Shown here: one piece after another, positions 1,545 to 53,754 of the stretch
Position numbering within the stretch: the first letter of the stretch is position 1
Layout of the letters: every line of letters begins with the position of its first letter
The notes under the pieces: generated by a model
Database searches by the model: none
What the model saw: the letters and a program-made list of their open reading frames with translations, nothing else
Told to the model about the DNA's origin: nothing
Source: Macrostomum lignano
Lineage: Eukaryota
Length of the DNA stretch: 64,000 bases
Direction of reading: 5' to 3'
NCBI GenBank assembly: GCA_002269645.1
Contig: NIVC01001671.1
Location: 62,001-126,000 of the forward strand
Program-made: the position numbers and the translations under genes

Positions 1545-4500
1545 TTACGTTTTGGTTTCCTTCGTGTTCGAGGGCTGGCTGAAATCGTCAACACCCGGCC
1601 GGTTTTCATGTCCTGTCACGGGATCTGTAGCTGGCCTGACAGTTAGTTAAATATAGTTTAGAAGATTGACGTGAATGTAAATTATGCACAGAAAATAACT
1701 AAAGAGGGTTTGCTGGTACATGTACATTTTAACATTCCTTGAATTTATATATCATTTTAATTTTGAAGTGGTTCCTTGCATTGGTGTGTATCTATAGATC
1801 TAACATACGCTTTCTTGAGGCCTATAAATCCAAACGTTGATCACGTGTTAGAATTTGTTAAAATGGTTGACCTTTGAATCACGCCGTTGATAGCATGAGA
1901 GAATTTCAAGTACATCCAAGCGTGTTACGTAGAAATCACGCGTATGTGGTGTCAATTAAATGTGTGCCGCACAGTGTAGGCTGGTGACCTTGAAATCACG
2001 CGTTGATCGCGTGTTAAAATTAGATTCAAGCGCTGTGACCTTGAAATCAAGCGTACGCCCTTGATGTTAATCGTGCTTGGAATAAATGTACACTGTGTAG
2101 GTTTGCAAACCTTGAGATCACGCGTTGATCGCGTGAATGTCAGAAAGCAATGTACGCTATCTTAAAACAAAAAAATCAATGCCCGTACAGCTTCAAAGGC
2201 TTTGTTTTACTTACGTGTTCATCTGATTCAGCTTTTCTCGATACTTGTCGCTTTCCAGCCAGAAGGCCTCCACAGGCGGGCCCCAGTCGGGCGTCTCCTT
2301 GAGAGCGGCCGTCAGTCCACCCCGACGCCAGACCTCGCAGATTCCGCAGCAGGGGATGAAGAGCACAGAGCCAACCATCATCAGCCAGCACATCGCTTCG
2401 CCCCAAATGGTGAACGGCTCCGAGTTGTAGCTTGGCGATTGGTACTTGACCAGCGAGAAGATCGCAATGAACTGCGGGTTGGTTAACATCGATTTTGAGA
2501 TGCGCTACCGTAAAAATCTTATGTAGACAACTATAGTAAGCCAGAGACAGAAAAGTATGAAGCTACATGTACTCTTTAATTTATCCGGTGCGCGAGAAGA
2601 CTGCTTCTAACGTGTGCGCACGCGATTGATGAGGTCCTTAGTTAAGCTGACTAAGGCTACATTTGAATTTTTGCTTATTGCATGTTCCGACATACGAGCG
2701 TACATGTTCAATCATCATAACTGGGTCGTGACATACCTGCGGAAGTTGCCAAAAAGTTACAGCCTTAAAACTACTTTCACTCAGGCTTCTTGAACGTAAG
2801 ATTAGTCACGTGTCAACAGCTTTCAACTATAACGACAGCAACTTCAAGTGACCTTGAAATGATTTTGAATCCACCCCACGTCTGCTTTCAACTCTAGTTT
2901 GAGGAAATCTTACCAAAATGAGAGCCGGAGTGATCCCAAGCCAACAGGCGATCCAGTAAGGCCCCGGACGGAATCCCAGCATCATCTGAATGTCGTTCAG
3001 AAAGTTTTTAATCCCGTACAGGTATGAGATTCCGAGCATCTCTACGATAGCCACGACGAACAGGTTATAGTAAGCGCAGTAGTCGTTAAGCATTGAGAAA
3101 TAGTAAATTCCTCCTGGACAGCACATTGGAATGCCAAGCAGAAACATGACAAGGCACACGACTGACTTGAATATTGCCTGCTTAGTGAAGTTCTCCTGCA
3201 ACCAGGGCCACTCGTCCATGCAAGTCGTGAGCACATTCTCAACGAAAGCAAATTGCGAATCGACGCCCAGCGTTATGATCATGATGAAGAACAGCACGCT
3301 CCAGAGCGGAGCGACGGGCATGGCGGCGAGGCCCTCGGGATAGGCGACGAACGCCAAACCCGGACCGCTCTTGGTCACCTCGGCCACCGGCAGGCCGGTC
3401 TTGTGCGCCATGAAACCGATCACCGAGAAGATGGCGAAACCGGCGAATATTGACGTGCCGCTGTTGATGCCCGCTACGATGAGGACATCTCTGCAGTGAC
3501 GATCGTTGGGTTTGTTGAGGATGAAAAGTTATGCTCATTCAAGGTGTACAGAGACTCTGAGTTTCTCATTGACAGGCATGTAAGCACTCGGTTTCTCGAG
3601 AGTCACATGACGTAACATGAGGTCAATTTTGTGCGCAAGGGCACTCCGCCCCCCCCCAGTTTTAGAACTGCATCCATCACTGGTGGCGAGATTACGTAGC
3701 AATAAACGTTACTTTATTGATCGATAAAAGAAGCAGACTCATTGAGCTAAGCGACTCACTTGTAGCAATTGTTCCGAAACTTGTTATAACTGGACATGGT
3801 CGTCAGGCAGCCGAAGGCGACGCCAAGCGAGTAGAAAATCTGCACCGCCGCCGCAGACCAGATCTTGAAAACAAATTTCCAGGAATTGCGGCTTCTAAAT
3901 AAACACTTAACACCTGCTGTTTAGCAAAGCCAAAACAGATTACCTCAGATGTAAGAAGCAAGCTGAAATCGGGTTTCAAGTAAAAAAGGATGCCGTCCTT
4001 GGCGCCCTCCAGCGTGACGCCGCGGATGAGGAGAATCACCAGCACGAGATAGGGAAATGTGGCGGTGAAGTACACCACCTGGGGAGGTGAAGGCAGCGTC
4101 CGTTCATCCGTCAGATACATCTGGCATTATCAATACCAAATGTCATCTGTAATGTCACCTTTTTAGACACGTGTTTTCAAACACGTCTAGCTGTCAGACG
4201 CGTTTATTTACATGTCAGAGTCGCGACCTCACAGACCTGTAAACACAATATCAGGTGCATCACAAACACACAAACCTTGACCTGACTACTTTAAACACAA
4301 TTTCAGATGCATTGCTAAAGTACAAACCTTGACCTGACCACTGTAAACACAATTTCAGATGCATTTCTAAAGTACAAACCTTGACCTGACCACTGTAAAC
4401 ACAATTTCAGATAGATTGCTAAAGTACAAACCTAGACCTGACCACTGTAAACAAAAATTCAGATAGATTGCTAAAGTACAAACCTTGACCTGACCACTGT

Positions 4501-7500
4501 AAACACAATTTCAGATGCATCTCAAAAGCACAAACCTTCCCAGAAGTCTTGACTCCCTTGAGCAGGCACGCGTAGATGATGATCCAGGCCAACAGCAGGC
4601 ACAAGGTCACGTGCCATTGCGGCGGTCCGATGGGGTCGGACATTTTCTTGATTGCTCCGTTTAAACTGGTGTAGCCCAGCATCACTCGTCTGCGCAAAGT
4701 TAAAAAGTTGAAAGGTTAAACATCAAGTTTCAGGAATGTCAGACAAGAAATTAAAACAAAAATACTGAATCAGTTTAATTGCACCTTCACTTACTCAAAG
4801 TACTGCTCGCTCGGAGTTTGATATTGAGTACAGTTGGTCTTTAAATCCTGGGAGCAGGCCTCCGGATTAGCTGTTATGGTTTAATCAAGAGTTTGGCTTA
4901 GTTTAGCTTGGAAAAGTTATTTAGAAGCACTGAACCGTAGTTTGTGAGTAGCATCAGCTGCATATTGCCTTGGAAAGTAATTTTTCGTTGAAAATGGCGT
5001 CATTATCTTTAATGTTCATACCTGAGTCGTTTCGCTAGGAAATTCTAAGGACGCCTCAAGATTGATCTTGGCGCTACCTTGATCTGATCTTGGTGCTACC
5101 CTCACCTGATCTTGGCGCTACCTTGATCTGATCTTGGCGCTAGCCTCACCCTGATCTCGGCGCTACCCTCACCTGATCTTGGCGCTAGCCTCACCTGATC
5201 TTGGCGCTAGCCTCACCCTGATCTTGGCGCTACCCTCACCTGATCTTGGCGCTAGCCTCACCTGATCTTGGCGCTACCCTGACCTGATCTTGGCGCTAGC
5301 CTCACCTGATCTCGGCGCTAGCCTCACCTGATCTTGGCGCTAGCCTCAACTGGTCTTGGCGCTAGCCTCACCTGATCTTTGCGCTAGCCTCATCTGATCT
5401 CGGCGCTACCCTCACCTGATCTCGGCGCTACCCTCACCTGATCTCGGCGCTACCCTCACCTGATCTCGGCGCTACCCTCACCTGATCTCGGCGCTACCCT
5501 CACCTGATCTCGGCGCTACCCTCAATTGATCTCGGCGCTACCCTCAATTGATCTCGGCGCTACCCTCACCAGATCTTGGCGCTACCCTCACCTGATCTTG
5601 GCGCTAGCCTGACCTGATCTTGGCGCTACCCTGACCTTATCTTGGCGCTACTTTGACCTGATCTAGGCGCTACCCTCACCTGATCTTGGCGCTACTTTGA
5701 CCTGAACTTGGCGCTACCTTGATCTGATCTTGGCGCTAGTCTGACATCCCAAATATCCAAAATCCAAGACGCTTACGATTGAAACCGGCTCTGAGATTCC
5801 CGGGCACATTGTGAGTGGCGTTGGTGGTGCTGACGCTGAGGTCCCGGCAGTGAAAATCGTTCCAATAGTTGTTGCAATCCGCCCAGGGCACCTTGGAGTT
5901 GAATGAGGCGAACAGGTAGAACAGGGCCCAGGCTATGATCACGTTGTAGTAGATGGAGACCAGCGCTGAGATGCTGACCATCGCCCAGCCCGTACCTGCG
6001 GGGTGGCGGTTGTTGAGCAGTGAAAATGAGTTTGGCTGAGAAATTGACTGAGCTTCGGGATTCTTGGACAGCCGGAGAAGCACTTCGGTTCGCAACTTCC
6101 GGAGCAGGGACTTCAGGACTTCAGGATAGTTGGAACTTCAGGAACAGGAGTGACCCAGATGAATAACCTCAGACTCAGTCAAACAGAACTTCAGGAACAG
6201 GTGTGACCCAGGTGAATAACCTCAGCCTCAGTCCAACAGAACTTCAGGAACCGGTGGGACCCAGGTGAATAACCTCAGCCTCAGTCCAACAGAACTTCAG
6301 GAACAGGTGTGACCCAGGTGAATAACCTCAGCCTCAGTCCAACAGAACTTCAGGAACAGGTGTGACCCAGGTGAATAACCTCAGCCTCAGTCCAACAGAA
6401 CTTCAGGAACAGGTGTGACCCAGGTGAATAACCTCAGCCGCAGTCCAACAGAACTTCAGGAACAGGTGTAACCCAGGTGAATAACCTCAGCCACAGTCAA
6501 ACAGAACTTCAGGAACAGGTGTGACCCAGGTGAATAACCTCAGCCACAGTCAAACAGAACTTCAGGAACAGGTTTGACCCAGGTGAATAACCTCAGCCTC
6601 AGTCCAAAAGAACTTCAGGAACAGGTGTAACCCAGGTGAATAACCTCAGCCTCAGTCCAACTGAACTTCAGGAACAGGTGGGACCCAGGTGAATAACCTC
6701 AGCCTCAGTCAAACAGAACTTCAGGAACAGGTGTGACTCAGGTGAATAACCTCAGACGCAGTCCAACAGATACCTTTCAGCAGCGGGCACGCCTTCCAGA
6801 TGGTGACGGGGCCCAGGTTGCCGAACTGACCAAACGCCACCTCCATGTAGAACAGCGGCAGGGCGGCGACACCCAGCATGATCAGGTAGGGGATCAGAAA
6901 GGCACCTCCGCCGTTCTTATAGCACAGGTAGGGGAAGCGCCACACGTTGCCGAGGCCCACGGCGTAGCCGATGCAGGACAGCAGGAAGTCGAACTGGCCG
7001 GTCCAGTTTCCGCGAGCCTCGTTCTCGTCAGCTGCCTCGCCTTCGCCCGCCTGCGGGGCCTCCGCGCTGTTGGATGCGTTCTGCCGGGTGGGGATAGTGT
7101 GGGGAGTGACTTGTAGAGTGACTTGAGGAGTGACATGTAGAGTGACTTGTGGGTGACTTGTAGAGTGAATTGTAGAGTGACTTGTGGAGTGACTTGTAGA
7201 GTGACTTGTGGGTGACTTGTAGAGAGACTTGTGGAGTGACTTGTGGAGTGACTTTTGGAGTGACTTTTGACTTGTGGAGTGACTTGTGGAGTGAATTTTG
7301 ACTTGTGGAGTGACTTGTAGAGTGACTTGTGGAGTGACTTGTGGAGTGACTTGTGGAGTGACTTGTGGAGTGACTTGTGGAGTGACTTGTGGAGTGACTT
7401 TTGGAGTGACTTTTGACTTGTGGAGTGACTTGTGGAGTGACTTGTTGGGTGACTTGTGGAGTGACTTGTGGAGTGACTTTTGGAGTGACTTTTGACTTGT

Positions 7501-7910
7501 GGAGTGACTTGTGGAGTGACTTTTGGAGTGACTTTTGACTTGTGGAGTGACTTGTGGAGTGAATTTTGACTTGTGGAGTGACTTGTAGAGTGACTTGTGG
7601 AGTGACTTGTGGAGTGAATTTTGACTTGTGGAGTGACTTTTGAAGTGATTTGTGGGTGACTTGTGGAGGGAAACCTGTGGAATAAGTGACACTTTTACTC
7701 GTAGATAACAGTGACTGTCTCTAGAGTGACAGTTGTAAAGTACAGTTGTAAAGTATCCGCTGTATTGATTGACCGATTTGGAGTGACCGTTATTAAAGAG
7801 TGACAACTGTTTCGCAAAAACCATAGGTGTGGTAAATTTACTGACCGTCTCTCACACTTGGTGAAGTGACAGGTAAATCATGTGCTATAGTATAAGTGGT
7901 GACTCACCAT
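1545..7910 (-). CDS. SLC6 sodium:neurotransmitter symporter, amino-acid (proline/glycine-like) type, copy A, ~640 aa
   Basis: Exons with GT-AG and compatible phases: 7908-7910 (ATG only), 6774-7080, 5777-5995, 4795-4870, 4536-4689, 3944-4078, 3760-3863, 2914-3490, 2215-2471, 1545-1635; total 1923 nt. Motifs [67 protein letters not shown]1 has G, not the monoamine-transporter D. First and last exons are inferred from homology with copy B. Confidence 0.93.
4240..4535. repeat. 52-bp minisatellite, SLC6-A intron 5 (~5-6 copies)
   Basis: Unit aaacacaatttcagatgcattgctaaagtacaaaccttgacctgaccactgt. Confidence 0.9.
5060..5735. repeat. 22-bp minisatellite, SLC6-A intron 3 (~30 copies)
   Basis: Unit ccctcacctgatct(t/c)ggcgcta. 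Confidence 0.9.
6130..6770. repeat. 53-bp minisatellite, SLC6-A intron 2 (~12 copies)
   Basis: Unit aacttcaggaacaggtgtgacccaggtgaataacctcagcctcagtccaacag. Confidence 0.9.
7105..7700. repeat. 12-bp satellite (gtgacttgtgga)n, SLC6-A intron 1
   Basis: Tandem gtgacttgtgga with degenerate edge; source of the QVTP/KSLH ORF artefacts. Confidence 0.92.
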
Positions 7911-7969
7911 ATGCATTTGGACTTGACAATGAGTTCTGAAACCTTGCACGCAGCCGAAGACCCCCGTAA

Positions 7970-9092
7970 CAGAATCTGCAACTTGCTTCTTCTTTATTTT
8001 GTTAAAGAAAACATAGAACACAAACAACTTATTAAATGCGGATTTTTTAACTTAAATTTTCAGAATCTGAAAAACAGAATTGAACGAGATGTTTTAACCG
8101 AGTTCATATTTGTACTTTTGAAAAACAAAATAAATAAATAAATTAGAGCAAAATTTAAAAGAAGTTTCGCCCTAGACATTTAGCAGCAAACCAGTTTAAA
8201 TATCGTTCATAATTTTATATCATATCATTCGGAAGATATGGAATACAGATAGCTTTAGCCACCGAGTTTTGTCAATGACTGCAAGAGCCAGCATATCTCA
8301 AGAAGATTAGTTTTAATGAATCTGTCAAATGCTTTCGCCAGGGCTAACTTGAACCTTAACGACACTCTGAGCCATTAAAAAGACCAGCTGGGCCACAGAA
8401 TAAATAAATAAGAAAAATGCTAAACTAGCCGACTAAGAGTAAGTGAGAAGGAGATGAAAACTCGCTTGTTAATGTAAAATTTAGTTTACTTGCATAAACT
8501 ATTGAGTAAAGTAGACTAATAAATATTTTAATGGCAAAACCTCTATTAAAGATAATTAAGGTCAGGTGTAGACGGAAAGTGTTGTGGAGAAACGATGTGG
8601 GGCTATGGCTGACCGACACAGACCCGGTCTTGGTCTGCTTGCGTGAAGTCAACCAAATTTCCGACGCATAAATATGTAAATTCGGTAACAAACATTCATA
8701 ATTTATGATCTTTTTTAATAGAATCGTCAAGGTGAAATAATTATTAAGAATGCACAGAATGCAAATTGAAAGCAATGTATGAAAAGGTATAAATATAAAG
8801 AAGTCAACACTCGAAGATAATTCGAATTTTTCATTCCATTAGCCGATGTACGAATAGTCTATGGTAAAACCCGGCATTCAGAGTGTATCTTAATTTTTAG
8901 TTCTGTTGCTCTTTGATTTTCTTTTGCAAAAGTGCAACTGAGTATAACAAAAAATTTATAAAAAATTTCCACTCTGCTTGAGATCCGGAAATTTCCGGTT
9001 CAGAAAAAGAGCCGCTCAAAAACTGGTTCAAAAATGATTTAAGAAAAAATTGATTTCAGTTTTTGTTAAAATGGAACGAGTCGCACAGACTT
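7970..9092. promoter_or_regulatory. Unique AT-rich spacer of the SLC6 palindrome; probable shared bidirectional promoter region
   Basis: Lies between the two divergent ATG exons and is not mirrored; promoter role is inferred from position. Confidence 0.5.
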
Positions 9093-9148
9093 TTACGGGT
9101 CTGTTGAGCTGCGGGCAACGTTTCAGAACTCAGCAGATCGACATTCAG

Positions 9149-12100
9149 ATGGTGAGTTCCCATTTGACCTTGAAAAGTCTTTCCTTCCTAATTCGATACA
9201 TTCACTCCAGACACTGATACGGTGCCTGCAACTTGCTGATCTATAAAAAAATCTTTCAAAATAGGTTTACTATATTAACGAAATGGTCAGTCTCATTTAG
9301 CATTATCCCTCTAAGGAAGTGGCACTTGAAAAACGGTCACTCTCATCTTTCAGTCACTCTATCTGCCGCTTTCACACTACAAGTCACTCCACAAGTCACT
9401 AAAAAAGTCACTCTACAAGTCACTCCACATGTCACTCTAAAAGTCACTTCACAATTCACTCCACATGTCACTCGACAAGTTTACAGCCCAAGTCACTCTA
9501 CAAGTCACTCCCCAGTTCACTCCACAAGTCTCTCCGCAATTCACTCCAAAAGTTACTCCACAAGTCACTTCACATGTCACTCAGCATGTCACTCTGAAAA
9601 TCAATCCACAAGTCACTGCACAAGTCACTCTACAAGTCACTCCACAAGTCATTCCACAAGTCACTCCCCAAGTCACTCCACAAGTCACTCCACAAGTCAC
9701 TCAACAATTCACTCCACAAGTCACTCCACAAGTCACTCTACAATTCACTCCACAAGTCATTCCACAAGTCACTCTACAAGTCACCCACAAGTCACTCCAC
9801 AAGTCACTCTACAAGTCACTCCACAAGTCACTCACAAGTCACTCCACAAGTCATTTCACAAGTCACTCCACAAGTCACTCTGCAATTCACTCCACAAGTC
9901 ACTCTACAATTCACTCCACAAGTCACTCCACAAAGTCACTCTACAAGTCACCCACAAGTAACTCCACAAGTCACTCTACAAGTCACTCCACAAGTCACTC
10001 CACAAGTCAAAAGTCACTCAACAAGTCACTCCACAAGTTAAAAGTCACTCCACAAGTCACTCCACAAGTCACTCCACAAGTCACTCCACAAGTCACTCCA
10101 CAAGTCACTCCACAAGTCACTCCACAAGTCACTCCACAAGTCACTCCACAAGTCACTCCACAAGTTAAAAGTCACTCAACAAGTCACTCCACAAGTTAAA
10201 AGTCACTCCTCAAGTCACTCTAAAAGTCACTCCTCAAGTCACTCTAAAAGTCACTCCCCACAATATCCCCACCCGCCAGAACGCATCCAACAGCGCGGAG
10301 GCCCCGCAGGCGGGCGAAGGCGAGGCATCTGACGAGAACGAGGCTCGCGGAAACTGGACCGGCCAGTTCGACTTCCTGCTGTCCTGCATCGGCTACGCCG
10401 TGGGCCTCGGCAACGTGTGGCGCTTCCCCTACCTGTGCTATAAGAACGGCGGAGGTGCCTTCCTGATCCCCTACCTGATCATGCTGGGTGTCGCCGCCCT
10501 GCCGCTGTTCTACATGGAGGTGGCGTTTGGTCAGTTCGGCAACCTGGGCCCCGTCACCATCTGGAAGGCGTGCCCGCTGCTGAAAGGTATCTGTTGGACT
10601 GAGGCTGAGGTTATTCACCTGGGTTACACCTGTTCCTGAAGTTCTTTTGGACTGAGGCTGAGGTTATTCACCTGGGTCACACCTGTTCCTGAAGTTCTTT
10701 TGGACTGAGGCTGAGGTTATTCACCTGGGTCACACCTGTTCCTGAAGTTCTGTTGGACTGAGGCTGAGGTTATTCACATGGGTCACACCTGTTCCTGAAG
10801 TTCTGTTGGACTGAGGCTGAGGTTATTCACCTGGGTCACACCTGTTCCTGAAGTTCTGTTGGACTGAGGCTGAGGTTATTCACCTGGGTCACACCTGTTC
10901 CTGAAGTTCTGTTTGACTGAGGCTGAGGTTATTCACCTGGGTCACACCTGTTCCTGAAGTTCTGTTGGACTGAGGCTGAGGTTATTCACCTGGGTCACAC
11001 CTGTTCCTGAAGTTCTGTTGGACTGCGGCTGAGGTTATTCACCTGGGTCACACCTGTTCCTGAAGTTCTGTTGGACTGAGGCTGAGGTTATTCACCTGGG
11101 TCACACCTGTTCCTGAAGTTCTGTTGGACTGCGGCTGAGGTTATTCACCTGGGTCACACCTGTTCCTGAAGTTCTGTTGGACTGAGGCTGAGGTTATTCA
11201 CCTGGGTCACACCTGTTCCTGAAGCTCCAACTACCCAGTTCCTGAAGCTCCAACTACCCTTTTCCTGAAGCTCCAACTACCCTGTTTCTGAAGCTCTAAC
11301 TACCCTGTTCCTGAAGCTCCAACTACCCTGTTCCCGTAGCGCCAACTACCCTGTTCCTGAAGCTCCAACTACCCTGTTCCTGAAGCTCTAACTATCTGTT
11401 CCTGAAGTTGCAACTATCCAGCTATCCAGCTATCAGCAGAAGTCCCTGCTCCGGAAGTTGCGAACCGAAGTGCTTCTCCGGCTGTCCAAGAATCCCGAAG
11501 CCTCAGTCAATTTCTCAGCTAAACTCAGTTTCACTGCTCAACAACCGCCACCCCGCAGGTACGGGCTGGGCGATGGTCAGCATCTCAGCGCTGGTCTCCA
11601 TCTACTACAACGTGATCATAGCCTGGGCCCTGTTCTACCTGTTCGCCTCATTCAACTCCAAGGTGCCCTGGGCGGATTGCAACAACTATTGGAACGATTT
11701 TCACTGCCGGGACCTCAGCGTCAACACCACCAACGCCACTCACAATGTGCCCGGGAATCTCAGAGCCGGTTTCAATCGTAAGCGTCTTGGATTTTGGATA
11801 TTTGGGATGTCAGACTAGCGCCAAGATCAGATCAAGGTAGCGCCAAGAACAGGTGAGGCTAGCGCCAAGATCAGGTGAGGGTAGCGCCAAGATCAGGTGA
11901 GGGTAGCGCCGAGATCAGGTGAGGCTAGCGCCAAGATCAGGTGAGGCTAGCGGCAAGATCAGGTGAGGGTAGCGCCAAGATCAGGTGAGGCTAGCGGCAA
12001 GATTAGGTGAGGGTGGCGCCAAGATCAGGTCAGGGTAGCGCCGAGATCAGGTGAGGCTAGCGCCAAGATTAGGTCAGACTAGCGCCAAGATCAGATCAAG

Positions 12101-15100
12101 GTAGCGCCAAGATCAGGGTAAGGCTAGCGCCAAGATCAGTCAGGGAAGTGCAACGATGTTGTCAAGCAAGCACCGAAATCTTGAGGCGTCCTTAGAATTT
12201 CCCAGCGAAGCGCTTTAGGTATGAACATTAAAGATAATGACGCCATTTTCAACGAAAAATTACTTTCTAAGGCAATATGCAGCTGATGCTACTCACAAAC
12301 TACTGTTCAGTGCCTGTAAATAACTTTTCCAAGCTAAACTAAGCCAAACTCTTGATTAAACCATAACAGCTAATCCGGAGGCCTGCTCCCAGGATTTAAA
12401 GACCAACTGTACTCAATATCAAACTCCGAGCGAGCAGTACTTTGAGTAAGTGAAGGTGCAATTAAACTGATTCAGTATTTTTGTTTTAATTTCTTGTCTG
12501 ACATTCTTGAAACTTGATGTTTAACCTTTCAACTTTTTAAATTTGCGCAGACGAGTGATGCTGGGCTACACCAGTTTAAACGGAGCAATCAAGAAAATGT
12601 CCGACCCCATCGGACGGCCGCAATGGCACGTGACCTTGTGCCTGCTGTTGGCCTGGATCATCATCTACGCGTGCCTGCTCAAGGGAGTCAAGACTTCTGG
12701 GAAGGTTTGTGCTTTTGAGATGCATCTGAAATTGTGTTTACAGTAGTCAGGTCAAGGTTTGTACTTTAGCAATGCATCTGAAATTGTGTTTACAGTGGTC
12801 AGGTCAAGGTTTGTAGTTTAGCAATGCATTTGAAATTGTGTTTACAGTGGTCAGGTCAAGGTTTGTAGTTTAGCAATGCATCTGAAATTGTGTTTACAGT
12901 TGTCAGGTCAAGGTTTGTACTTTAGCAATGCATCTGAAATTGTGTTTACAGTGGTCAGGTCAAGGTTTGTACTTTAGCAATGCATCTGAAATTGTGTTTA
13001 CAGGTGTCAAGTCAAGGTTTGTACTTTAGCAATGCATTTGAAATTGTGTTTACAGTGGTCAGGTCAAGGTTTGTACTTTAGCTATGCATCTGAAATTGTG
13101 TTTACATTGGTCAGGTCATAGTCTTGAAGTCACGACTCTGACAGGCGAAATAATTACGTATCCAACCGATAGAAGAGTTATATACGAGCGTAACAGGTAG
13201 TGGGTTTATCTTACAGGTAGAAAGTGTGTCTAACAGGTAGACAGTGTGTTAAGAAAAACTTTTTACCTATTAGATACATCTTCTGAAAGTTTATCTAACA
13301 ACTAAAATGTATATATATAACTATATAGATAGAGGAGACGATACTGACACATTAATCTAACAGGATGAATGCGTGATTAATAGCTGGATTGACAGAACCT
13401 GTCAGGCTGAATCACATGTGAAGCTCATGGAACACCGATCTTATAGTCGTGAAAGTTTCTGTAAATACCCTACTGAGCTGACGGACTCGTTAATGCATAC
13501 CGCTGCATATAGCGCTGCCTTCACCTCCCCAGGTGGTGTACTTCACCGCCACGTTTCCCTATCTCGTGCTGGTGATTCTCCTCATCCGCGGCGCAACGCT
13601 GGAGGGCGCCAAGGAGGGCATCATATTCTACTTGAAACCGGACTTCAGCCTGCTACTTACATCTGAGGTAATTAATCTGTTTTGGCTCTGCTTAACAGCA
13701 GGTGTTAAGTGTTTATTTAGAAGCCGCAATTCCTGGAAATTTGTTTTCAAGATCTGGTCTGCGGCGGCGGTGCAGATTTTCTACTCGCTTGGCGTCGCCT
13801 TTGGCTGCCTGACGACCATGTCCAGTTATAACAAGTTTCGGAACAATTGCTACAAGTGAGTCGCTTATTTCAACAAATACGAGTAGTCATTGCTACTATT
13901 AAAATGACGGCGCTTATAAAAACGACAATTAATAATGATGGCAACACCTTGATGTAATTTTACTGAATGCATTCTCTTTAAATATTTGATTAAAGATCCG
14001 AAGACAAAGGCAGATGAGTTCAGTGGTAAATGCGTCACTCATCAGTCTCTTTCGCGCTAAAATATCCCTGGGTTAAATCTCCACGTGTGTGTTGGGACTT
14101 GTGCATGAAATCGGCCCGGGCTTACAAGCTAAACCCCAAGCCACAGAGAGTACATGTTGGACAACGAGAAATTAAGGCAACAATCTCACCTGACGCTACA
14201 CTAATACCTCTAAAACCGGTCTGAACTTTGTGGAAGTTTTGGGCACACAACGCAATAGCGTTGACAGCACAAATTGTGTTGAAAAAAGGGGCACACAGTT
14301 CGAACTGCACTATAAAACCAAGGAAACTTACCAATTGCAGAGACGCCCTCATCGTAGCGGGCATCAACAGCGGCACGTCAATATTCGCCGGTTTCGCCAT
14401 CTTCTCGGTGATCGGTTTCATGGCGCACAAGACCGGCCTGCCGGTGGCCGAGGTGACCAAAAGCGGTCCGGGCCTGGCGTTCGTCGCCTATCCCGAGGGC
14501 CTCGCCGCCATGCCCATCGCTCCGCTTTGGAGCGTGCTGTTCTTCATCATGATCCTAACGCTGGGCGTCGATTCGCAATTTGCCATGGTTGAAACTGTGC
14601 TCACCGCTTGCATGGACGAGTGGCCCTGGTTGCAGGAGAACTTCACTAAGCAGGCAATATTCAAGTCAGTCGTGTGCCTTGTCATGTTTCTGCTTGGCAT
14701 TCCAATGTGCTGTCCTGGGGGGATTTACTATTTCTCAATGCTGAACGACTACTGCGCTTACTATAACCTGTTCGTCGTTGCTCTCGTAGAGATGCTCGGA
14801 ATCTCATACCTGTACGGGATTAAAAACTTTCTGAACGACATTCAGATGATGCTGGGATTCCGTCCGGGGCCTTACTGGATCGCCTGTTGGCTTGGGATCA
14901 CTCCGGCTCTCATTTTGGTAAGTTTTTAATAAATTTTTGTCAAAGCACGCGTTGACTGCGTGATCCAAGGTCGCTGCAAGGTTGCTTAAAGATTCTCTCG
15001 ATGCTGATCTAATCTTTTGCCATGTGACTTTTCTCTCGTGCTTGCTAAAGACGTATTCTACGCGTGATTCTAGGTCACTTTAAAACCGCAACGTTTTTTG

Positions 15101-16175
15101 CAATCACTTCTACTTCAAACCGTTAAGGAACCGCTAAGTTGAGAACCTCATTCTGAATTTTTTAAAGTCCTAATCAGCTGGTTCAAAGTTCTATTTTCTA
15201 TTCTGGCTAAAAATGGGAGACAATCTCTTGTAGGGCCTAAGTAAACCACGAGACGTAGATTGTGGATGCGTTGCAAGCAGAAATCCCTTATCATCTTTTT
15301 GTCATGTGATCCTACACCGATGCGCCTACTAAAAAACGTCAACCAACCCGCAGTTCATTGCGATCTTCTCTCTGGTCAAGTACCAATCGCCAAGCTACAA
15401 CTCGGAGCCGTTCACCATTTGGGGCGAAGCGATGTGCTGGCTAATGATGGTTGGCTCTGTGCTCTTCATCCCCTGCTGCGGAATCTACGAGGTCTGGCGT
15501 CGGGGTGGACTGACGGCCGCTCTCAAGGAGACGCCCGACTGGGGCCCGCCTGTGGAGGCCTTCTGGCTGGAAAGCGACAAGTATCGAGAAAAGCTGAAAC
15601 AGATGAACACGTAAGTAAAACAAAGCCTTTGAAGCTGTACGGCCACGTCACGTGCTAGAACTGTCGCATTTTCTGTTTTCACGTTAACTCGAAAGGTCTC
15701 GCAATCAGCGCGTGATCTCAAGGTCAAGCGCTGGTAATTGAATTCTAGCACGCGGTCTACATGTGGTTTCAAGGTCACATGCTTACAGTGTACATTTAAG
15801 TCACACGCAATCAGCGCCTGATTTCAAGGTCACGCGCTTACACTTAAATTCACGCACGAGATCTACGCGTCTATGGTCATACCTTAGAGCCCCATTTCCC
15901 ACCTAATCAACGCGTGCCTACAAGGTCAATTGTAACATCACGACAGGATCCCAAGGTCACGCGCTGACGTTTATTATGTGACCTTTGTCACGTACAAGAG
16001 CTCCGACTGCCTTTGAAGGATTCCGAACTTTTTACCATTTAACCATTTTTTTCGAGCCAGTACATTCATTTTGATTTCCCCTAACATTGAAAAACTTTAA
16101 TCTAGGCCAGCTAAGGATGGCGTGACGGCTGGAGTTGAAAATCAAGTTGCCAGCACCGTCGATGTCAGTCAGTAG
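9149..16175 (+). CDS. SLC6 sodium:neurotransmitter symporter, amino-acid type, copy B, ~633 aa
   Basis: Exons: 9149-9151 (ATG only), 10280-10586, 11559-11777, 12370-12445, 12551-12704, 13533-13667, 13752-13855, 14341-14917, 15354-15610, 16106-16175; total 1902 nt. Internal exon lengths match copy A exactly (307, 219, 76, 154, 135, 104, 577, 257). Confidence 0.93.
9380..10260. repeat. 12-bp satellite (aagtcactccac)n, SLC6-B intron 1
   Basis: Reverse complement of the 7105-7700 array, longer here. Confidence 0.92.
10591..11410. repeat. 53-bp array (~12 copies) followed by 23-bp array (~8 copies), SLC6-B intron 2
   Basis: 53-mer to ~11222, then (ctccaactaccctgttcctgaag)n. Confidence 0.9.
11815..12140. 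repeat. 22-bp minisatellite, SLC6-B intron 3 (~15 copies)
   Basis: Unit tagcgccaagatcaggtgaggg, mirror of 5060-5735. Confidence 0.9.
12705..13115. repeat. 52-bp minisatellite, SLC6-B intron 5 (~8 copies)
   Basis: Mirror of 4240-4535; starts at the splice donor. Confidence 0.9.
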
Positions 16176-16818: not shown

Positions 16819-17152
<334 letters not shown>

Positions 17153-17324: not shown

Positions 17325-21749
<4,425 letters not shown>

Positions 21750-22515: not shown

Positions 22516-22856
22516 CGCCAGTTGAGACGGTTGTTTAGACGCAATCTGCGGAAAATAACAGCAGAATTCGAACTTTAAATCCCAATTCGATATTTTTCAA
22601 AACAATTTTGTCTTTACAACGAAAATGATCGATTATGGTATATTGCTATGTGTCTGCAGAATGTAGGTTTGTGCATTTTATATAGAAATTTTTGTAAATA
22701 TTTTTAGCTTGTTGATCGAAAAAGATCGATGTTGTGGTGCAAAAAAAATTGGATAATCTTTTTGAAAAGTAAAATTTTTAAAAAAGATAACTTTTTTTTA
22801 ACTTCACAGATATTGATACAAAATTTTGAGTCAGACAAGATTTAAAACAAAATTGA

Positions 22857-24632
22857 GAATGAGTCATGAACATGTGATAAAGAGTCAGAAACAGGCGAGA
22901 ATGAGTCAGGAACACATCAGAATGAGTCAGGAACACACGAGAATGAGTCAGGAACACACGAGAATGAGTCAGGAACACACAAGAATGAGTCAGAAACAGG
23001 CGAGAATGAGTCAGGAACACATCAGAATGAGTCAGGAACACACGAGAATGAGTCAGGAACACATGAGAATGAGTCAGGAACACATCAGAATGAGTCAGGA
23101 ACACACGAGAATGAGTCAGGAACACATGAGAATGAGTCAGGAACACATCAGAATGAGTCAGGAACACATCAGAATGAGTCAGGAACACATGAGAATGAGT
23201 CAGGAACACACGAGAATGAGTCAGGAACACACGAGAATGAGTCAGGAACACACGAGAATGAGTCAGGAACACATGAGAATGAGTCAGGAACACATCAGAA
23301 TGAGTCAGGAACACACGAGAATGAGTCAGGAACACACGAGAATGAGTCAGGAACACACGAGAATGAGTCAGGAACACACGAGAATGAGTCAGGAACACAC
23401 GAGAATGAGTCAGGAACACACGAGAATGAGTCAGGAACACACGAGAATGAGTCAGGAACACACGAGAATGAGTCAGGAACACACGAGAATGAGTCAGGAA
23501 CACATGAGAATGAGTCAGGAACACATGAGAATGAGTCAGGAACACATGAGAATGAGTCAGGAACACATGAGAATGAGTCAGGAACACATGAGAATGAGTC
23601 AGGAACACACGAGAATGAGTCAGGAACACATGAGAATGAGTCAGGAACACATGAGAATGAGTCAGGAACACATGAGAATGAGTCAGGAACACACGAGAAT
23701 GAGTCAGGAACACACGAGAATGAGTCAGGAACACACGAGAATGAGTCAGGAACACACGAGAATGAGTCAGGAACACACGAGAATGAGTCAGGAACACACG
23801 AGAATGAGTCAGGAACACATCAGAATGAGTCAGGAACACATGAGAATGAGTCAGGAACACATGAGAATGAGTCAGGAACACACGAGAATGAGTCAGGAAC
23901 ACACGAGAATGAGTCAGGAACACACGAGAATGAGTCAGGAACACACGAGAATGAGTCAGGAACACACGAGAATGAGTCAGGAACACACATAGAATGAGTC
24001 AGGAACACACGAGAATGAGTCAGGAACACATGAGAATGAGTCAGGAACACATGAGAATGAGTCAGGAACACATGAGAATGAGTCAGGAACACACGAGAAT
24101 GAGTCAGGAACACACGAGAATGAGTCAGGAACACACGAGAATGAGTCAGGAACACACGAGAATGAGTCAGGAACACACGAGAATGAGTCAGGAACACACG
24201 AGAATGAGTCAGGAACACATCAGAATGAGTCAGGAACACATGAGAATGAGTCAGGAACACATGAGAATGAGTCAGGAACACACGAGAATGAGTCAGGAAC
24301 ACACGAGAATGAGTCAGGAACACATGAGAATGAGTCAGGAACACATGAGAATGAGTCAGGAACACATGAGAATGAGTCAGGAACACATGAGAATGAGTCA
24401 GGAACACATGAGAATGAGTCAGGAACACACGAGAATGAGTCAGGAACACATGAGAATGAGTCAGGAACACATGAGAATGAGTCAGGAACACATGAGAATG
24501 AGTCAGGAACACACGAGAATGAGTCAGGAACACACGAGAATGAGTCAGGAACACACGAGAATGAGTCAGGAACACACGAGAATGAGTCAGGAACACATTA
24601 GAATGAGTCAGGAACACATCAGAATGAGTCAT
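22857..24632. repeat. 21-bp minisatellite (~84 copies)
   Basis: Unit gagaatgagtcaggaacaca(c/t); one 1-bp phase slip near 23990. Confidence 0.96.
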
Positions 24633-24916
24633 TAGATAGGTGAGAATAAGTCAAAGATAGACTAAAATTAGTCAACTAAACATGATGATAAAATGAGTCA
24701 AGTTTAAAGACGACAGCAAGAAAAGTACAAGCAATTGACATATTTCGCGTGCAGGAAAACAAAGTAAAAAAGTTACATATTTCAGAGAATTTGTGCGATA
24801 CGAGACAACGGATTTCTTTGTCAATTGAAATCAAAATATTTTGTCTTGTTTTAAAAAAACTGTCTCAACAAGTTTGAGTACTTCTCAAGTAGAGCTCTGT
24901 TAGCAACTTTCTCCCT

Positions 24917-25740: not shown

Positions 25741-27096
25741 TTAACTACTTTTCCCAGCCAGGCTAAACGAGGCTGTCGCCGTGGCCTGAGCAGCCGTCAC
25801 CACCTCGATGCCTCGCAGGCCGCCCCGAGCCAGTCGGCGGATGGTCTGATAGGCTCTGCGCTGCCTTCGCAGCACCAGCGTCTTGAACGCTCGCCGGTAA
25901 TCCGCCGAGAACAGCGCGTAGATAAACGGATTCAGCGCGCTATTGACGTAGCCCAACCAGAAGCAGACATCGAAGGTCAGGGGAGCAACGCAGTCCTGGC
26001 AGAAGGCGCCGAACAAGTACACCGAGAAGAACGGGGCCCAGCAGCCAATGAACGTGACGCAGATGATTGCCAGCATTCGAGCCGCTTTCAGTTCGCGTCC
26101 GTAGCGACCGGAGAACGGGGCGTACTTTGTGGCCACGTTGATCAGGGTGTTCCATGAAGCCTTGCGGCTGGTGTTGGCGGCCGGAGGCACCTGCAGATTC
26201 TGCTGCTGCTGCTGCTGCTGCTGCGAGTTCTTTACCAAGCGGACCCGTCGACTGACGATGGAGACTCCAGCGCCTCCGCTGTAGTTCGCTGCTCCGGACG
26301 AGGTGCCTCCGCCGCCGCCGCCTCGGTGGATTCGCAGCTCTCCGTGTTGAGCGGCGCTCTCTCGGCTGGCCAAGACGCCCCTGCGTCCGGCTTTGAGAGT
26401 CCGGTGCACTGAGGCGAAGATGTGCAAGTAGAAGTAGATCATGACCAGCAGGGGAAGGAAGAAGGAGCCCAGGGCGGAGTAGACGATGTACAGAGGCGTG
26501 CTGTGCGCGATGGTGCACTGCTGGCCCAGGTCTAGGCACAGCAAGCTTTCATTGCTGCTGCTGCTGCTGTTGCTGCTGGAATCGGAGCTGTCATCAGTCA
26601 GTGAGGAGTTCTGCAGGAACAGTTTGAACAGAGTTGGCAGGCTGATGGCGAAGGCCAGAATCCAGACGCTAGCAACTAGAAGTCGTGCTCGACGCCGGTT
26701 CATCAGCTTCGGATACTTCAGCGGGTGACGCAGGCTCAGGTAGCGGTCCAGGCTGATGACAACCAGGTTCAGGATCGAGGCAGTGCAGGTCCACACGTCT
26801 ACGGCCAACCAGATTTGACACCACCATCTGCTGAAGATCCAATGCTTCAGAAGCACCTGGTAGGCGATGGAGAACGGCAGTACCAGGAGGCCCAGCAGGA
26901 GGTCGCTGGTGGCCAAACTCACCACGAACGTGCTGGTCAGAGCGGTCTGCAGCTTCGCCGATGTGCAGGCGGCCAGCACAACCAGGATGTTCCCGAATAT
27001 GATGATGATGTTGACAATGCCGAGACTGCAGGTCTGAGCGATGAAGTGAGGTGAGGTGAGGTACACCTTGGTGATGCAGCCAGTCTCGTTGCTCAT
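25741..27096 (-). CDS. Oamb: Class A amine GPCR, alpha-adrenergic-like octopamine receptor (OAMB-like), intronless, 451 aa
   Basis: GN in TM1, SLATSD, TM3 WLAVDVWTCTASILNL with the amine-binding Asp, DRY, TM5 YSALGSFFLP, TM6 CWAPFF, TM7 FWLGYVNSALNPFIYALFS; subtype assigned from motif recall. Confidence 0.88.
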   Translation of the reverse strand: MSNETGCITKVYLTSPHFIAQTCSLGIVNIIIIFGNILVVLAACTSAKLQTALTSTFVVSLATSDLLLGLLVLPFSIAYQVLLKHWIFSRWWCQIWLAVDVWTCTASILNLVVISLDRYLSLRHPLKYPKLMNRRRARLLVASVWILAFAISLPTLFKLFLQNSSLTDDSSDSSSNSSSSSNESLLCLDLGQQCTIAHSTPLYIVYSALGSFFLPLLVMIYFYLHIFASVHRTLKAGRRGVLASRESAAQHGELRIHRGGGGGGTSSGAANYSGGAGVSIVSRRVRLVKNSQQQQQQQQNLQVPPAANTSRKASWNTLINVATKYAPFSGRYGRELKAARMLAIICVTFIGCWAPFFSVYLFGAFCQDCVAPLTFDVCFWLGYVNSALNPFIYALFSADYRRAFKTLVLRRQRRAYQTIRRLARGGLRGIEVVTAAQATATASFSLAGKSS

Positions 27097-27756
27097 TGTG
27101 TTTTACTAGCTGTGAATGCGGTCGAAATGCTTGGACTGACAAGTCTCCTTTGTTGCCGAGTTCGTTAAAGAGTCGAGCTTGTGTGTCTTTAAACAGAAAA
27201 CTGCTTGCGTGCTGCATACAGAAAAGATATTGAAGGGGAGCGGAGGGGCAAAGGCCTCCTGACCAATGAAACGTCTTCGGCCTTCAAAGCTAGAAGGAGA
27301 TTGAATCGCAAAAGGAAAAATAAGAGGGAAGAGAGATGATGACAGGGGATAACTGAGTGAGACGTGAGAAGGCACCTAGAAGGGCTAGTTTGAGTCAGGG
27401 GGGGGAGGATTCTGCGACAGACGACCCGCCTGATGAGTCTTGTTAGGAAGGGATGCAGAGTGGAGAGCTGTGAGGCTGGAAACACTCGATGCAGCGGTGC
27501 AATATGGCAGAGCAAATATTCCCGGGGGAGAATTTGGACAGCTGCGCGGTGCACCTGCTTTGCAGCTACTTTTTAACTGCTTTCCTCCGCTTGTTGCCAC
27601 CGGGCTGGCTAAAATGCTACATGTACAGCTTCTAGCAACTGAGATGGCGTGGGTTTAATCTGCTTGCGAGCCGTGCGTTCTCTGCGCTAAGTAGATGGAG
27701 AGAAGCCAGAGTAAAAAGGTATAAGTTCTTCTCTGATTGTTATGAGCTAATTTTTG

Positions 27757-28685
<929 letters not shown>

Positions 28686-38700: not shown

Positions 38701-39489
<789 letters not shown>

Positions 39490-42267: not shown

Positions 42268-42776
42268 GGCTTGAATACCGGAGTTAATAATCTTATAATC
42301 GCTTCGGTCCTCGGAGAATGAATTCGGAGTATAAATCCTTCTTATGTTGAACATTCAAGTACGAGTAGAAAGAGACTTGCAGCTTTAAGTACAAAAAAGT
42401 TTTTTGCCACGTGTAAATTTGCATTTTTAAATAGTTTAAATTTTTGTTGCAGAACTTCAAACCTACAGGGAAAGTATAAAGTTTTTCTGGGTTTCTGAAT
42501 ATGGCGTAGACCCACAAAAATAGTTGAAGATCATTTCTTCTGATCAAATATTTTAAAGTTATTTCAATAATTCATGCTACTTTCCAAGAAGGCTTGCATG
42601 GATGCCTTACAGTGACTGGCAACACCAAAAAACGACTTTACGGCTGCGCAACTTTCTTTTCTTTTTTAAAAAAATATTTTTCACGGAGCCACGCAGACAC
42701 ACGAAAATCCAGAACACGGGCTGACTTTTTGTCAATACTAAAATTATATTATGGACAAGAAGTAGCTCCGTGTTAA

Positions 42777-45879: not shown

Positions 45880-47050
<1,171 letters not shown>

Positions 47051-48037: not shown

Positions 48038-48319
48038 ACTCGAAGATTAGGAAAGAAGTTGGGTACCTAAAATTATAAAAATATGAGGCGTACATGACCG
48101 TAAATAATAACTATGTCAGGCTCAAATAGTCGGAAATTATAGTTCACCCTATAACTAAGCAAAGTTAACGATTATCATGGAATTTAGCCAAAATATTCAT
48201 GTAGCCTGAAGTTACAGAACACTTTCATTTTAGAAAAGCAATGGCTGGAATATGCTTCATGAATTTCTACGGAAAAGAAGTTGTACATCCATAAATATTT
48301 TAGATCGAATATCCGCCCG

Positions 48320-53655: not shown

Positions 53656-53754
53656 GTTAAAAAATATACTGTTAGATCATTTCACTAATTTTTGAAAACT
53701 TCTTCAAAACTGCTGACCTTAGTATTTAGTAAACTAAGGTCATTTAAACTGCAG

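What the first reader, a model, noticed from the sequence alone, without database searches (positions are those of the whole stretch)
1545..16175. Head-to-head inverted duplication of a complete SLC6 transporter (14.6-kb gene palindrome)
Two intact 10-exon genes face away from a 1.1-kb unique spacer. Internal exon sizes are identical and the intronic satellites are mirrored. Both frames are open and differ at specific sites, so both may be functional and co-regulated. This architecture resembles gene-conversion-maintained palindromes.
Basis: seen in the sequence. Interest (0 to 1): 0.75.

Follow-up and report, generated by a model that had tools for sequence, protein, structure and literature searches.

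The report
Inverted SLC6 transporter gene pair, flatworm
Two intact, head-to-head copies of an amino-acid/neurotransmitter-type (SLC6) transporter gene in the flatworm Macrostomum lignano are a real, already annotated, old inverted duplication whose inner half is kept nearly identical by copying between the two copies, which is a well-known kind of gene arrangement and not a new one.

Summary
Window 1545-16175 holds two complete 10-exon SLC6 (Pfam SNF) genes, head-to-head around a 1,073-bp unique spacer. All splice sites are GT-AG. Exons 2-9 have identical sizes, and four intronic minisatellites are mirrored.

My gene models match GenBank proteins PAA65240.1 (Mlig012133.g1, 642 aa, - strand) and PAA65241.1 (Mlig012780.g1, 659 aa, + strand) exactly. 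Both lie on Macrostomum lignano contig NIVC01001671.1. The same pair, spacer and flanks occur on two other contigs, so this is not a mis-join.

It is not a continuous 14.6-kb palindrome. Only an inner block (intron 1 to intron 5) is 92-98% identical including introns. Exons 6-7, 8 and 9 are homology islands. Introns 5 (part), 7, 8 and 9 are unalignable, and exons 1 and 10 differ by 26-28%.

In a six-copy comparison, exons 2-5 have no copy-type-fixed site, and L-R dS (0.006-0.017) does not exceed the dS between contigs. Exons 6-9 carry 20 clustered fixed differences (dS about 0.10).

Best reading: an old inverted duplication with continuing gene conversion between the two copies. The - strand copy has derived changes in TM8, including a substrate-pocket residue. 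It is a new example of a known kind, of modest interest.

The parts
1545..7916 (-). L gene = Mlig012133.g1 (PAA65240.1), 642-aa SLC6 transporter. CDS exons: 7908-7916, 6774-7080, 5777-5995, 4795-4870, 4536-4689, 3944-4078, 3760-3863, 2914-3490, 2215-2471, 1545-1635.
   Evidence: Exon model with GT-AG introns. The translation is an exact match to PAA65240.1. Pfam SNF family (on the R-copy concatenate, which is 97% identical).
9071..16175 (+). R gene = Mlig012780.g1 (PAA65241.1), 659-aa SLC6 transporter. CDS exons: 9071-9151, 10280-10586, 11559-11777, 12370-12445, 12551-12704, 13533-13667, 13752-13855, 14341-14917, 15354-15610, 16106-16175.
   Evidence: Exon model with GT-AG introns. Exact match to PAA65241.1. 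Pfam SNF E=1.7e-199. Aligns to GlyT2 structure 9wbr over residues 38-631.
7995..9067 (.). Unique AT-rich central spacer (1,073 bp) between the two diverged exon-1 homologues. It presumably holds the two divergent promoters.
   Evidence: Inverted homology stops at 7930-7994/9068-9132 (74%). There is no significant arm-to-arm similarity upstream of exon 1. The spacer is conserved at 95-96.5% on the two other contigs.
7894..7994 (-). L exon 1 (mostly 5'UTR; the only in-frame ATGs are the last three codons, ATG CAT ATG) plus its GTGAGT donor. It is the diverged homologue of R exon 1.
   Evidence: Sequence reading. Inverted repeats I1 and I2 at 74-75%.
4225..7685 (-). L side of the inner homogenised block, running from the intron-1 minisatellite through exons 2-5 to the intron-5 minisatellite. 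It is 92-98% identical to 9372-13118.
   Evidence: There are no type-fixed sites among 50 variable sites.
9372..13118 (+). R side of the inner homogenised block.
7103..7685 (.). 12-bp minisatellite (GGAGTGACTTGT, about 50 copies) in L intron 1. Its mirror is at 9372-10257 (about 75 copies). It forms the inner edge of the high-identity block.
   Evidence: TRF. The array has 31-75 copies across the six arms.
6133..6770 (.). 53-bp minisatellite (12 copies) in L intron 2. Its mirror is at 10590-11224 (12 copies), followed by a 23-bp array at 11212-11416.
5063..5738 (.). 22-bp minisatellite (30.6 copies) in L intron 3. Its mirror is at 11816-12139 (14.7 copies).
4237..4538 (.). 52-bp minisatellite (5.8 copies) in L intron 5. 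Its mirror is at 12702-13118 (8 copies). It forms the outer edge of the high-identity block.
2183..4098 (-). L 3' half. The homology islands are exon 6-intron 6-exon 7 (3748-4098), exon 8 (2905-3495) and exon 9 (2183-2487). They are separated by introns 7 and 8, which are unrelated to their R counterparts.
14555..14607 (+). Densest cluster of L|R fixed differences, in exon 8 (TM8: L431I, M441F, T444N, A448T in R numbering). The L equivalent is about 3224-3276.
   Evidence: Site patterns. Scan statistic p=0.00035. Alignment to GlyT2 T582 and PMC4919009.

Best explanation
The locus is a real, old, head-to-head (divergently transcribed) inverted duplication of an SLC6/NSS amino-acid-type transporter gene in Macrostomum lignano. 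The two genes are Mlig012133.g1 on the - strand and Mlig012780.g1 on the + strand. Sequence that has not been exchanged (exon 1, exon 10, introns 5b and 7-9, promoters) has drifted to 26-28% difference or is unalignable. The rest is kept similar by non-allelic (arm-to-arm) gene conversion. A contiguous 3.5-kb inner block, bounded on both sides by minisatellite arrays, is fully homogenised, introns included. In the 3' half, conversion is confined to the exons, where enough homology survives. Twenty clustered differences stay fixed between the two gene types and are enriched for amino-acid changes in TM7/TM8. At most of these positions the - strand copy is derived, including a substrate-pocket position (M441F, equivalent to GlyT2 T582). 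I infer that both genes are functional, that they have separate, non-homologous promoters, and that the - strand copy has shifted in substrate or ion handling while selection resists conversion at those sites. Shown here: the structure, the intactness of both genes, the replication on three contigs and the mosaic divergence pattern. Inferred: conversion as the mechanism, minisatellites as tract boundaries or initiators, and functional divergence.
For: Structure and intact frames. Exact identity to the adjacent GenBank proteins PAA65240.1 and PAA65241.1. Window placed on NIVC01001671.1. The same pair, a 1.15-kb spacer, colinear flanks and the same cadherin neighbour occur on NIVC01001984.1 and NIVC01000702.1. 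Mosaic homology: control introns 3 and 6 give SW scores of 422 and 75, while introns 5b, 7 and 8 score 22, 14 and 27, near the shuffled maxima of 12, 13 and 16; intron 9 scores 60 (shuffled maximum 14), which I attribute, without inspecting the alignment, to the conserved flank next to exon 9. Per-segment divergences. Exon 1 is 74% identical and exon 10 differs by 28%. Concerted evolution: in exons 2-5, L-R dS within a contig is 0.006-0.017, against 0.006-0.035 between orthologous copies. In the inner block, 0 of 50 variable sites are type-fixed and many variants are shared between arms. All 20 type-fixed CDS sites lie in exons 6-9 (p=2e-5), and 8 of them fall within 52 bp (p=0.00035). In exons 6-9, L-R dS of 0.10 is only slightly above the between-contig dS (up to 0.08), although the neighbouring introns are unalignable yet 96-100% conserved between contigs. 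C2_L carries R-type alleles at CDS sites 864/867/874 and 1128/1129. Selection: dN/dS is 0.18. Fixed N:S is 11:9 against polymorphic 9:37, Fisher p=0.008. The R copy keeps the outgroup state at 361, 431, 441, 444 and 448. M441 aligns with GlyT2 T582, which PMC4919009 lists as a predicted glycine-site residue. The annotation is RNA-seq-guided (PMC5730564) and includes the copy-specific exons 1 and 10.
Against: No reads were examined. Consensus polishing of PacBio reads could in principle blur 97%-identical arms and mimic some shared variants. The three contigs are homeologues or haplotypes of one inbred line, not a population sample, so the MK-like test is only indicative, and two of its fixed sites share a codon. 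Relationships among the contigs are themselves mosaic (W_L is about equal to C3_L, and C2_R about equal to C3_R), so haplotype switching or allelic recombination contributes to the incompatible site patterns. Paralogue-specific expression was not seen directly, and no paper or supplement searched mentions either gene ID. The functional meaning of M441F is inferred from an alignment only.
Confidence: 0.75

Rival explanations
1. Assembly artefact: two haplotypes or homeologues of a single SLC6 gene were mis-joined in inverted orientation, or a palindromic chimeric long read was assembled.
For: Mlig_3_7 is a redundant PacBio/Canu assembly of a line with extra large chromosomes, and 180 Mb of it lies in blocks that are at least 95% identical (PMC5730564). 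Arm identity of 92-98% is in the range of haplotype or homeologue divergence.
Against: The same inverted pair, with the same unique spacer and flanks, is present on three independently assembled contigs. L and R have different, non-homologous introns 7-9 and diverged exons 1 and 10. Each of these is conserved at 96-100% among the three L copies and among the three R copies. Alleles of one gene would not look like this. A missed-adapter palindrome would have identical arms and no spacer.
Confidence: 0.03
2. A moderately young inverted duplication (age about dS 0.1) with no gene conversion. Exons are similar only through purifying selection and youth. The introns and terminal exons became unalignable through fast indel and repeat turnover, and the inner block is simply less mutated.
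For: M. lignano introns are full of unstable minisatellites whose copy number differs in every arm. dN/dS is 0.18, as expected under purifying selection.
Against: Introns 7-9 are 96-100% identical between contigs whose exon dS reaches 0.08, so they are not turning over fast. Homologous but unconverted exons 1 and 10 differ by 26-28%. Differences are distributed very unevenly (4 in 756 nt against 37 in 1073 nt, p=9e-6). In exons 2-5, L-R divergence within a contig does not exceed the orthologous divergence, and variants are shared between arms.
Confidence: 0.1
3. One copy, most likely the faster-evolving L copy with its 3-codon exon-1 ORF, is a decaying or non-functional duplicate. Its frame is kept open only by conversion from the functional copy.
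For: L has most of the derived amino-acid changes. It lacks the upstream ATG of R exon 1. One R copy on another contig carries a 1-bp deletion in exon 8, so individual copies can be damaged, or mis-polished.
Against: All three L copies keep complete 642-aa frames with canonical splice sites. L-specific changes are conservative and fixed in all three contigs. Within-type dN (0.001-0.004) is far below dS. The L-specific exon 10 is 100% conserved across contigs. The annotation model rests on RNA-seq.
Confidence: 0.07
4. The exon-only similarity in the 3' half arises from cDNA (RNA)-mediated conversion and not from DNA-DNA conversion.
For: Homology around exon 8 ends within 5-9 bp of the splice sites.
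Against: Intron 6 is converted together with exons 6 and 7 (0-1.6% difference). Intronic flanks of 16-32 bp around exon 9 and 12-20 bp around exons 6-7 are conserved. The inner block includes whole introns.
Confidence: 0.05

Closest known systems
Drosophila inverted duplicate gene pairs under concerted evolution (Hsp70Aa/Ab at 87A; Amy-p/Amy-d amylase genes), recalled from memory and not tested here
   Same: Two complete genes lie in divergent (head-to-head) orientation around a short unique spacer. The coding regions are homogenised by gene conversion while the flanking and non-coding sequence diverges.
   Different: Here the genes are long and have 10 exons. Conversion is mosaic: the inner block is converted with its introns, while the outer part is converted only in exons. 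A cluster of fixed, mostly non-synonymous differences persists. The edges of the converted block coincide with minisatellites.
Gene-conversion-maintained ampliconic palindromes of mammalian sex chromosomes (human Y P1-P8, X-linked inverted repeats), from memory
   Same: Inverted arms flank a unique spacer and carry intact genes. Arm-to-arm conversion makes the arms more alike than their age predicts.
   Different: Those arms span 9 kb to 1.45 Mb and are >99.9% identical along their whole length. Here the arms are 6.5-7 kb, 92-98% identical over about 70-75% of their length, and unalignable elsewhere. No testis-specific or ampliconic context is known for this locus.
SLC6 amino-acid transporter branch (GlyT2/SLC6A5, PROT/SLC6A7, GlyT1/SLC6A9, ATB0,+/SLC6A14)
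   Same: Full-length Pfam SNF match. About 50-55% identity to GlyT- and PROT-like proteins of many invertebrates and vertebrates. The best solved-structure matches are GlyT2, PROT and GlyT1. The TM1 [10 protein letters not shown]6 QIFYSLG and TM8 LGVDS motifs are conserved.
   Different: This is a lineage-specific flatworm paralogue pair and no 1:1 vertebrate orthologue has been shown. Pocket residues differ from GlyT2 (G in place of S479, F in place of W482, M/F in place of T582), so the substrate is unlikely to be glycine alone and remains unknown.
M. lignano paralogue Mlig024770 (P0002, 67% identical)
   Same: Same family and species. It is also present on three contigs (g1-g3).
   Different: No inverted partner lies within 10 kb upstream of g2, and the contig ends about 1 kb downstream. 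The gene span is compact, at 3.9 kb. The inverted duplication is therefore specific to the Mlig012133/012780 lineage.

Membership tests
SLC6 / neurotransmitter:sodium symporter (NSS) family | Full-length match to the Pfam SNF (PF00209) profile above the gathering threshold | tested here: met
   664 bits against a cut-off of 27; profile positions 1-522 of 524 are covered.
SLC6 / neurotransmitter:sodium symporter (NSS) family | Conserved Na+/substrate-site motifs in TM1 (GNVWRFPY), TM6 (QIFxSLG) and TM8 (LGxDS/T) | tested here: met
   Both copies carry [24 protein letters not shown] and LTLGVDSQF, aligned column for column with human GlyT2. Residue roles follow PMC4919009.
SLC6 / neurotransmitter:sodium symporter (NSS) family | Na+(/Cl-)-coupled transport activity | not testable with these tools
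   Needs heterologous expression and uptake or electrophysiology.
Glycine/proline transporter subgroup (SLC6A5/7/9) | Closest sequence and structure relatives are GlyT2, PROT and GlyT1 | tested here: met
   The top PDB matches are GlyT2 (E=1e-179), PROT (6e-176) and GlyT1 (1e-164). Database hits are named GlyT1/2-like or PROT-like at 47-57% identity.
Glycine/proline transporter subgroup (SLC6A5/7/9) | GlyT2-type glycine pocket residues (S479, W482, T578, T582) | tested here: not met
   The aligned residues are G, F, S and M (R copy) or F (L copy) (residue list from PMC4919009). The genes should not be named glycine transporters.
Conversion-maintained inverted-repeat palindrome | Two inverted arms around a unique spacer | tested here: met
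   The spacer is 7995-9067.
Conversion-maintained inverted-repeat palindrome | Near-identity (>99%) along the whole arm | tested here: not met
   Identity is 92-98% over about 70-75% of each arm. Introns 5b and 7-9 are unalignable, and exons 1 and 10 are 26-28% diverged.
Conversion-maintained inverted-repeat palindrome | Arm-to-arm divergence lower than or equal to divergence between orthologous arms (concerted evolution) | tested here: met
   Met for the inner block only. In exons 2-5, L-R dS is 0.006-0.017 against 0.006-0.035 between contigs, and no sites are type-fixed. Not met for exons 6-9 (dS 0.10 against 0.01-0.08).
Conversion-maintained inverted-repeat palindrome | Physical continuity confirmed by spanning reads or clones | not testable with these tools
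   There is only indirect support, from three independently assembled contigs with the same structure.

The most novel reading that the evidence does not exclude
This may be a conversion-versus-selection mosaic. Minisatellite arrays in introns 1 and 5 would act as initiators or boundaries of a 3.5-kb arm-to-arm conversion tract. In the 3' half, conversion would be limited to exons. A TM8 island of fixed, mostly non-synonymous differences, including the S1-pocket position M441F, would be actively protected from conversion because the - strand copy has gained a new substrate specificity. If so, the locus would be a compact natural example of neofunctionalisation persisting inside a converting palindrome.
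Probability: 0.3. Interest if true: 0.45.

Novelty: new member of a known kind. Interest (0 to 1): 0.3.

Why it matters
The locus gives a clean, small and triplicated example of how inverted paralogues evolve partly in concert. It shows where conversion tracts stop (at minisatellites and at exon edges), and how a few amino-acid differences in a transporter's substrate pocket can persist against homogenisation. For M. lignano genomics it is also a warning: near-identical inverted paralogues, on top of threefold assembly redundancy, make read mapping, RNAi or CRISPR targeting and expression estimates for these SLC6 genes ambiguous unless exons 1 and 10 or the 20 diagnostic sites are used. It does not reveal a new kind of system.

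Tried and rejected
1. The first tblastn used a multi-protein file and produced unusable bulk output. It was repeated with P0001 alone.
2. My first exon boundaries were off by one at three donors and gave frameshifts. They were corrected.
3. blastn did not find L exon 10 or L exon 1. Both were found by reading the sequence and confirmed by the exact protein match.
4. The idea that the 12-bp minisatellite ORF running into exon 2 (6721-7824) encodes an N-terminal repeat was rejected. It is intron 1, with an upstream exon 1 and a canonical acceptor.
5. An Rfam scan of the whole window found nothing at gathering thresholds.
6. Literature and supplement searches for the gene IDs found nothing, so there is no published expression or functional data for these genes in the held library.
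7. No closer orthologue from another Macrostomum species appeared in the protein search; the next hit is the 67% paralogue. The duplication could therefore not be dated against a speciation event.
8. cDNA-mediated conversion was considered and rejected, because intron 6 and the intron flanks are co-converted.
9. Bacterial-type promoter and terminator scans, structure prediction and the large representative-protein search were not run. They would not bear on the question.
Full report
**Observation.** The inverted duplication exists as described. The repeat finder and a self-BLAST give a colinear series of reverse-complement matches between about 2183-7685 and 9372-15642 at 92-98% identity. TRF shows four minisatellites (units of 12, 53, 22 and 52 bp) present in mirror order in both arms, with different copy numbers.

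ORFs in both arms carry obvious SLC6 motifs. A rough concatenate matches Pfam SNF over its full length (E=1.7e-199).

**Source and gene models.** The best database hit is a Macrostomum lignano protein at 95% identity. Using it as a guide, I built exon models.

- The right (R, + strand) gene has ten exons between 9071 and 16175. All introns are GT..AG and the product is 659 aa.
- The left (L, - strand) gene has exons 2-9 of exactly the same lengths (307, 219, 76, 154, 135, 104, 577, 257 nt).
- L has a diverged exon 10 at 1545-1635.
- L exon 1 contains only three in-frame coding codons (ATG CAT ATG, 7908-7916) before a GTGAGT donor. The product is 642 aa.

Both translations are exact matches to the adjacent GenBank entries PAA65240.1 (BOX15_Mlig012133g1) and PAA65241.1 (BOX15_Mlig012780g1). 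They lie on contig NIVC01001671.1 of assembly GCA_002269645.1, and the window starts at about position 62001 of that contig.

Residual exon-1 homology (65 nt, 74%) ends at 7994 and 9068, leaving a 1,073-bp unique spacer.

**Artefact or real?** The cluster look-up shows the same two gene types as adjacent genes on two further contigs. Fetching those contigs shows the same head-to-head arrangement, a 1.15-kb spacer and the same cadherin neighbour. The three contigs are colinear across both arms, the spacer and the outer flanks at 93-98% identity.

The assembly paper explains this threefold redundancy by the karyotype of the sequenced line. It also states that the GenBank annotation derives from a genome-guided RNA-seq transcriptome (PMC5730564).

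L and R also have different, non-homologous introns 7-9 and diverged terminal exons. These are conserved within each type across contigs. A mis-join of haplotypes or a palindromic chimeric read is therefore effectively excluded. No reads could be inspected directly.

**Anatomy of the homology.** The 'palindrome' is a mosaic.

- An inner block runs from the intron-1 minisatellite to the intron-5 minisatellite (4225-7685 vs 9372-13118). It is 92-98% identical including the introns.
- Further out, only exon 6-intron 6-exon 7, exon 8 and exon 9, each with 5-32 bp of flank, are similar.
- Local alignment of introns 5 (non-repeat part), 7 and 8 scores near the shuffled background. Intron 9 scores 60 against a shuffled maximum of 14; I attribute this to the conserved flank next to exon 9 but did not inspect the alignment. 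Control introns 3 and 6 score 422 and 75.
- Exon 10 differs at 28% of aligned positions, and exon 1 at 26%.

About 70-75% of each arm is homologous.

**Mode of evolution.** Between the window's two copies, exons 2-9 differ at 41 of 1829 sites (dS 0.062, dN 0.011, dN/dS 0.18). The differences are very unevenly spread: 4 in exons 2-5 against 37 in exons 6-9 (p=9e-6).

I then aligned all six copies (L and R on three contigs). The site patterns are as follows.

- Twenty sites are fixed between the L and R types. All lie in exons 6-9 (p=2e-5), and 8 fall within 52 bp of exon 8 (p=0.00035).
- In the inner block, none of 50 variable unique-sequence sites is type-fixed. Many variants are shared between an L and an R arm.
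- In exons 2-5, L-R dS within a contig (0.006-0.017) is no greater than dS between orthologous copies on different contigs (0.006-0.035).
- In exons 6-9, L-R dS is 0.10 against 0.01-0.08 between contigs. Yet the adjacent introns are unalignable between types and 96-100% conserved within types.
- One L copy (contig 2) carries R-type alleles in short stretches of exons 6 and 8.

Together this indicates an old duplication. Sequence that has not been exchanged is at least 26% diverged. Non-allelic gene conversion has continued on top of that. It is complete in the inner block, whose edges coincide with minisatellite arrays, and confined to exons further out.

There are caveats. The contigs are not a population sample. 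Their mutual relationships are themselves mosaic. Consensus polishing could blur very similar arms.

**Function.** The closest solved structures are human GlyT2, the proline transporter and GlyT1. Related proteins in other animals are named GlyT-like or PROT-like at about 50% identity.

The GlyT2 glycine-pocket residues S479, W482 and T582 are G, F and M/F here (residue list in PMC4919009). The substrate is therefore probably a different, likely larger, amino acid, and it is unknown.

Fixed differences are enriched for amino-acid changes: fixed N:S is 11:9 against 9:37 for within-type variation (p=0.008). Outgroup comparison shows that R keeps the ancestral residue at five positions (361, 431, 441, 444, 448), while L is derived there (A361V, L431I, M441F, T444N, A448T). 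The M. lignano paralogue P0002 also agrees with R at 300, 310 and 596, but the wider outgroups are split at those positions. Position 441 aligns with the S1-site residue GlyT2 T582.

I infer, at moderate confidence, that both copies are functional and that L has shifted in substrate or ion handling, with selection keeping this island from being converted.

**Regulation.** The two exon-1 and upstream regions share only 65 nt at 74%. The genes therefore have distinct proximal promoters in a shared 1.07-kb spacer. Co-regulation is possible but is not implied by the sequence.

**Comparison and novelty.** This works like the classical divergently oriented duplicates under concerted evolution, such as Drosophila Hsp70Aa/Ab and the Amy pair (from memory). 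On a small scale it also resembles conversion-maintained palindromes.

It fails the defining 'near-identical whole arms' criterion of the latter. The genes are already annotated as hypothetical proteins. No paper in the held library mentions them.

A 67%-identical paralogue (Mlig024770) has no inverted partner within 10 kb upstream, and the contig ends about 1 kb downstream of it.

**Verdict.** This is a new member of a known kind. It is of modest interest (0.3), mainly as a tidy case of mosaic conversion against selection and as a practical caution for mapping and gene targeting in this redundant genome.

Noticed in passing
L002 about position 2716 (NIVC01000702.1; R-type copy, exon 8, CDS alignment column 1147): The third contig's R copy has a 1-bp deletion in exon 8, which explains its truncated 428-aa annotation (PAA78200.1). 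It is either a real pseudogenising mutation in one of the three copies or a PacBio polishing error.
   Followed up: partly
window 6721-7824 (-) and 9233-10199 (+): The intron-1 minisatellite has a 12-bp unit (a multiple of 3), so long spurious ORFs (up to 367 aa) run from the repeat straight into exon 2. A naive ORF caller would add a repeat 'N-terminus' to the transporter.
   Followed up: yes
arms alignment of window, L001 and L002: The relationships among the three contigs are mosaic. L arms of the window and contig 3 are identical over introns 2-7. R arms of contigs 2 and 3 are identical over intron 6-exon 10. R arms of the window and contig 3 are identical upstream of exon 1. This suggests recombinant haplotypes or homeologues, or haplotype switching by the assembler.
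   Followed up: partly
window 25741-27096 (-): An intronless 451-aa rhodopsin-family GPCR (Pfam 7tm_1, E=2.5e-66) with DRY-like and NPxxY-like motifs and a long, Q-rich third intracellular loop. It looks aminergic-like.
   Followed up: partly
window 40911-42354 (-): Two exons of a fibrinogen-related-domain protein (Pfam Fibrinogen_C).
   Followed up: partly
window 45880-46341 (+): An exon encoding an Arf/Arl-like small GTPase domain (Pfam Arf, E=9e-16).
   Followed up: partly
window 53692-55012 (+): An astacin metalloprotease exon (HEFMHALGFWHEQSRADRD zinc motif; Pfam Astacin, E=1e-30). It is followed directly by an in-frame minisatellite encoding (TDTIIDI)n.
   Followed up: partly
window 56968-62064 (+): A GC-rich non-LTR (LINE-type) retrotransposon. 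A 520-aa ORF1-like protein with no Pfam hit is followed by endonuclease, reverse transcriptase and RNase H domains, split over three overlapping or adjacent ORFs. The pol region therefore appears frameshifted or degenerate.
   Followed up: partly
window 16820-17152, 18005-18546, 22778-24635, 27747-28467, 31174-31695, 38935-39450, 48252-48998, 62206-63968: The window is extremely dense in micro- and minisatellites, including (TGTC)n at three places, (CTAT)n and a 21-bp array of about 1.8 kb. This fits the 15% simple/tandem-repeat content reported for this genome (PMC5730564).
   Followed up: no
window 1636-2214 (-), L intron 9: L intron 9 contains several copies of a motif of about 18 bp (ACGCGTGATTTCAAGGTC-like) that is absent from R intron 9. 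It could be a degenerate local repeat or a small inserted element that contributed to the intron's non-homology.
   Followed up: no
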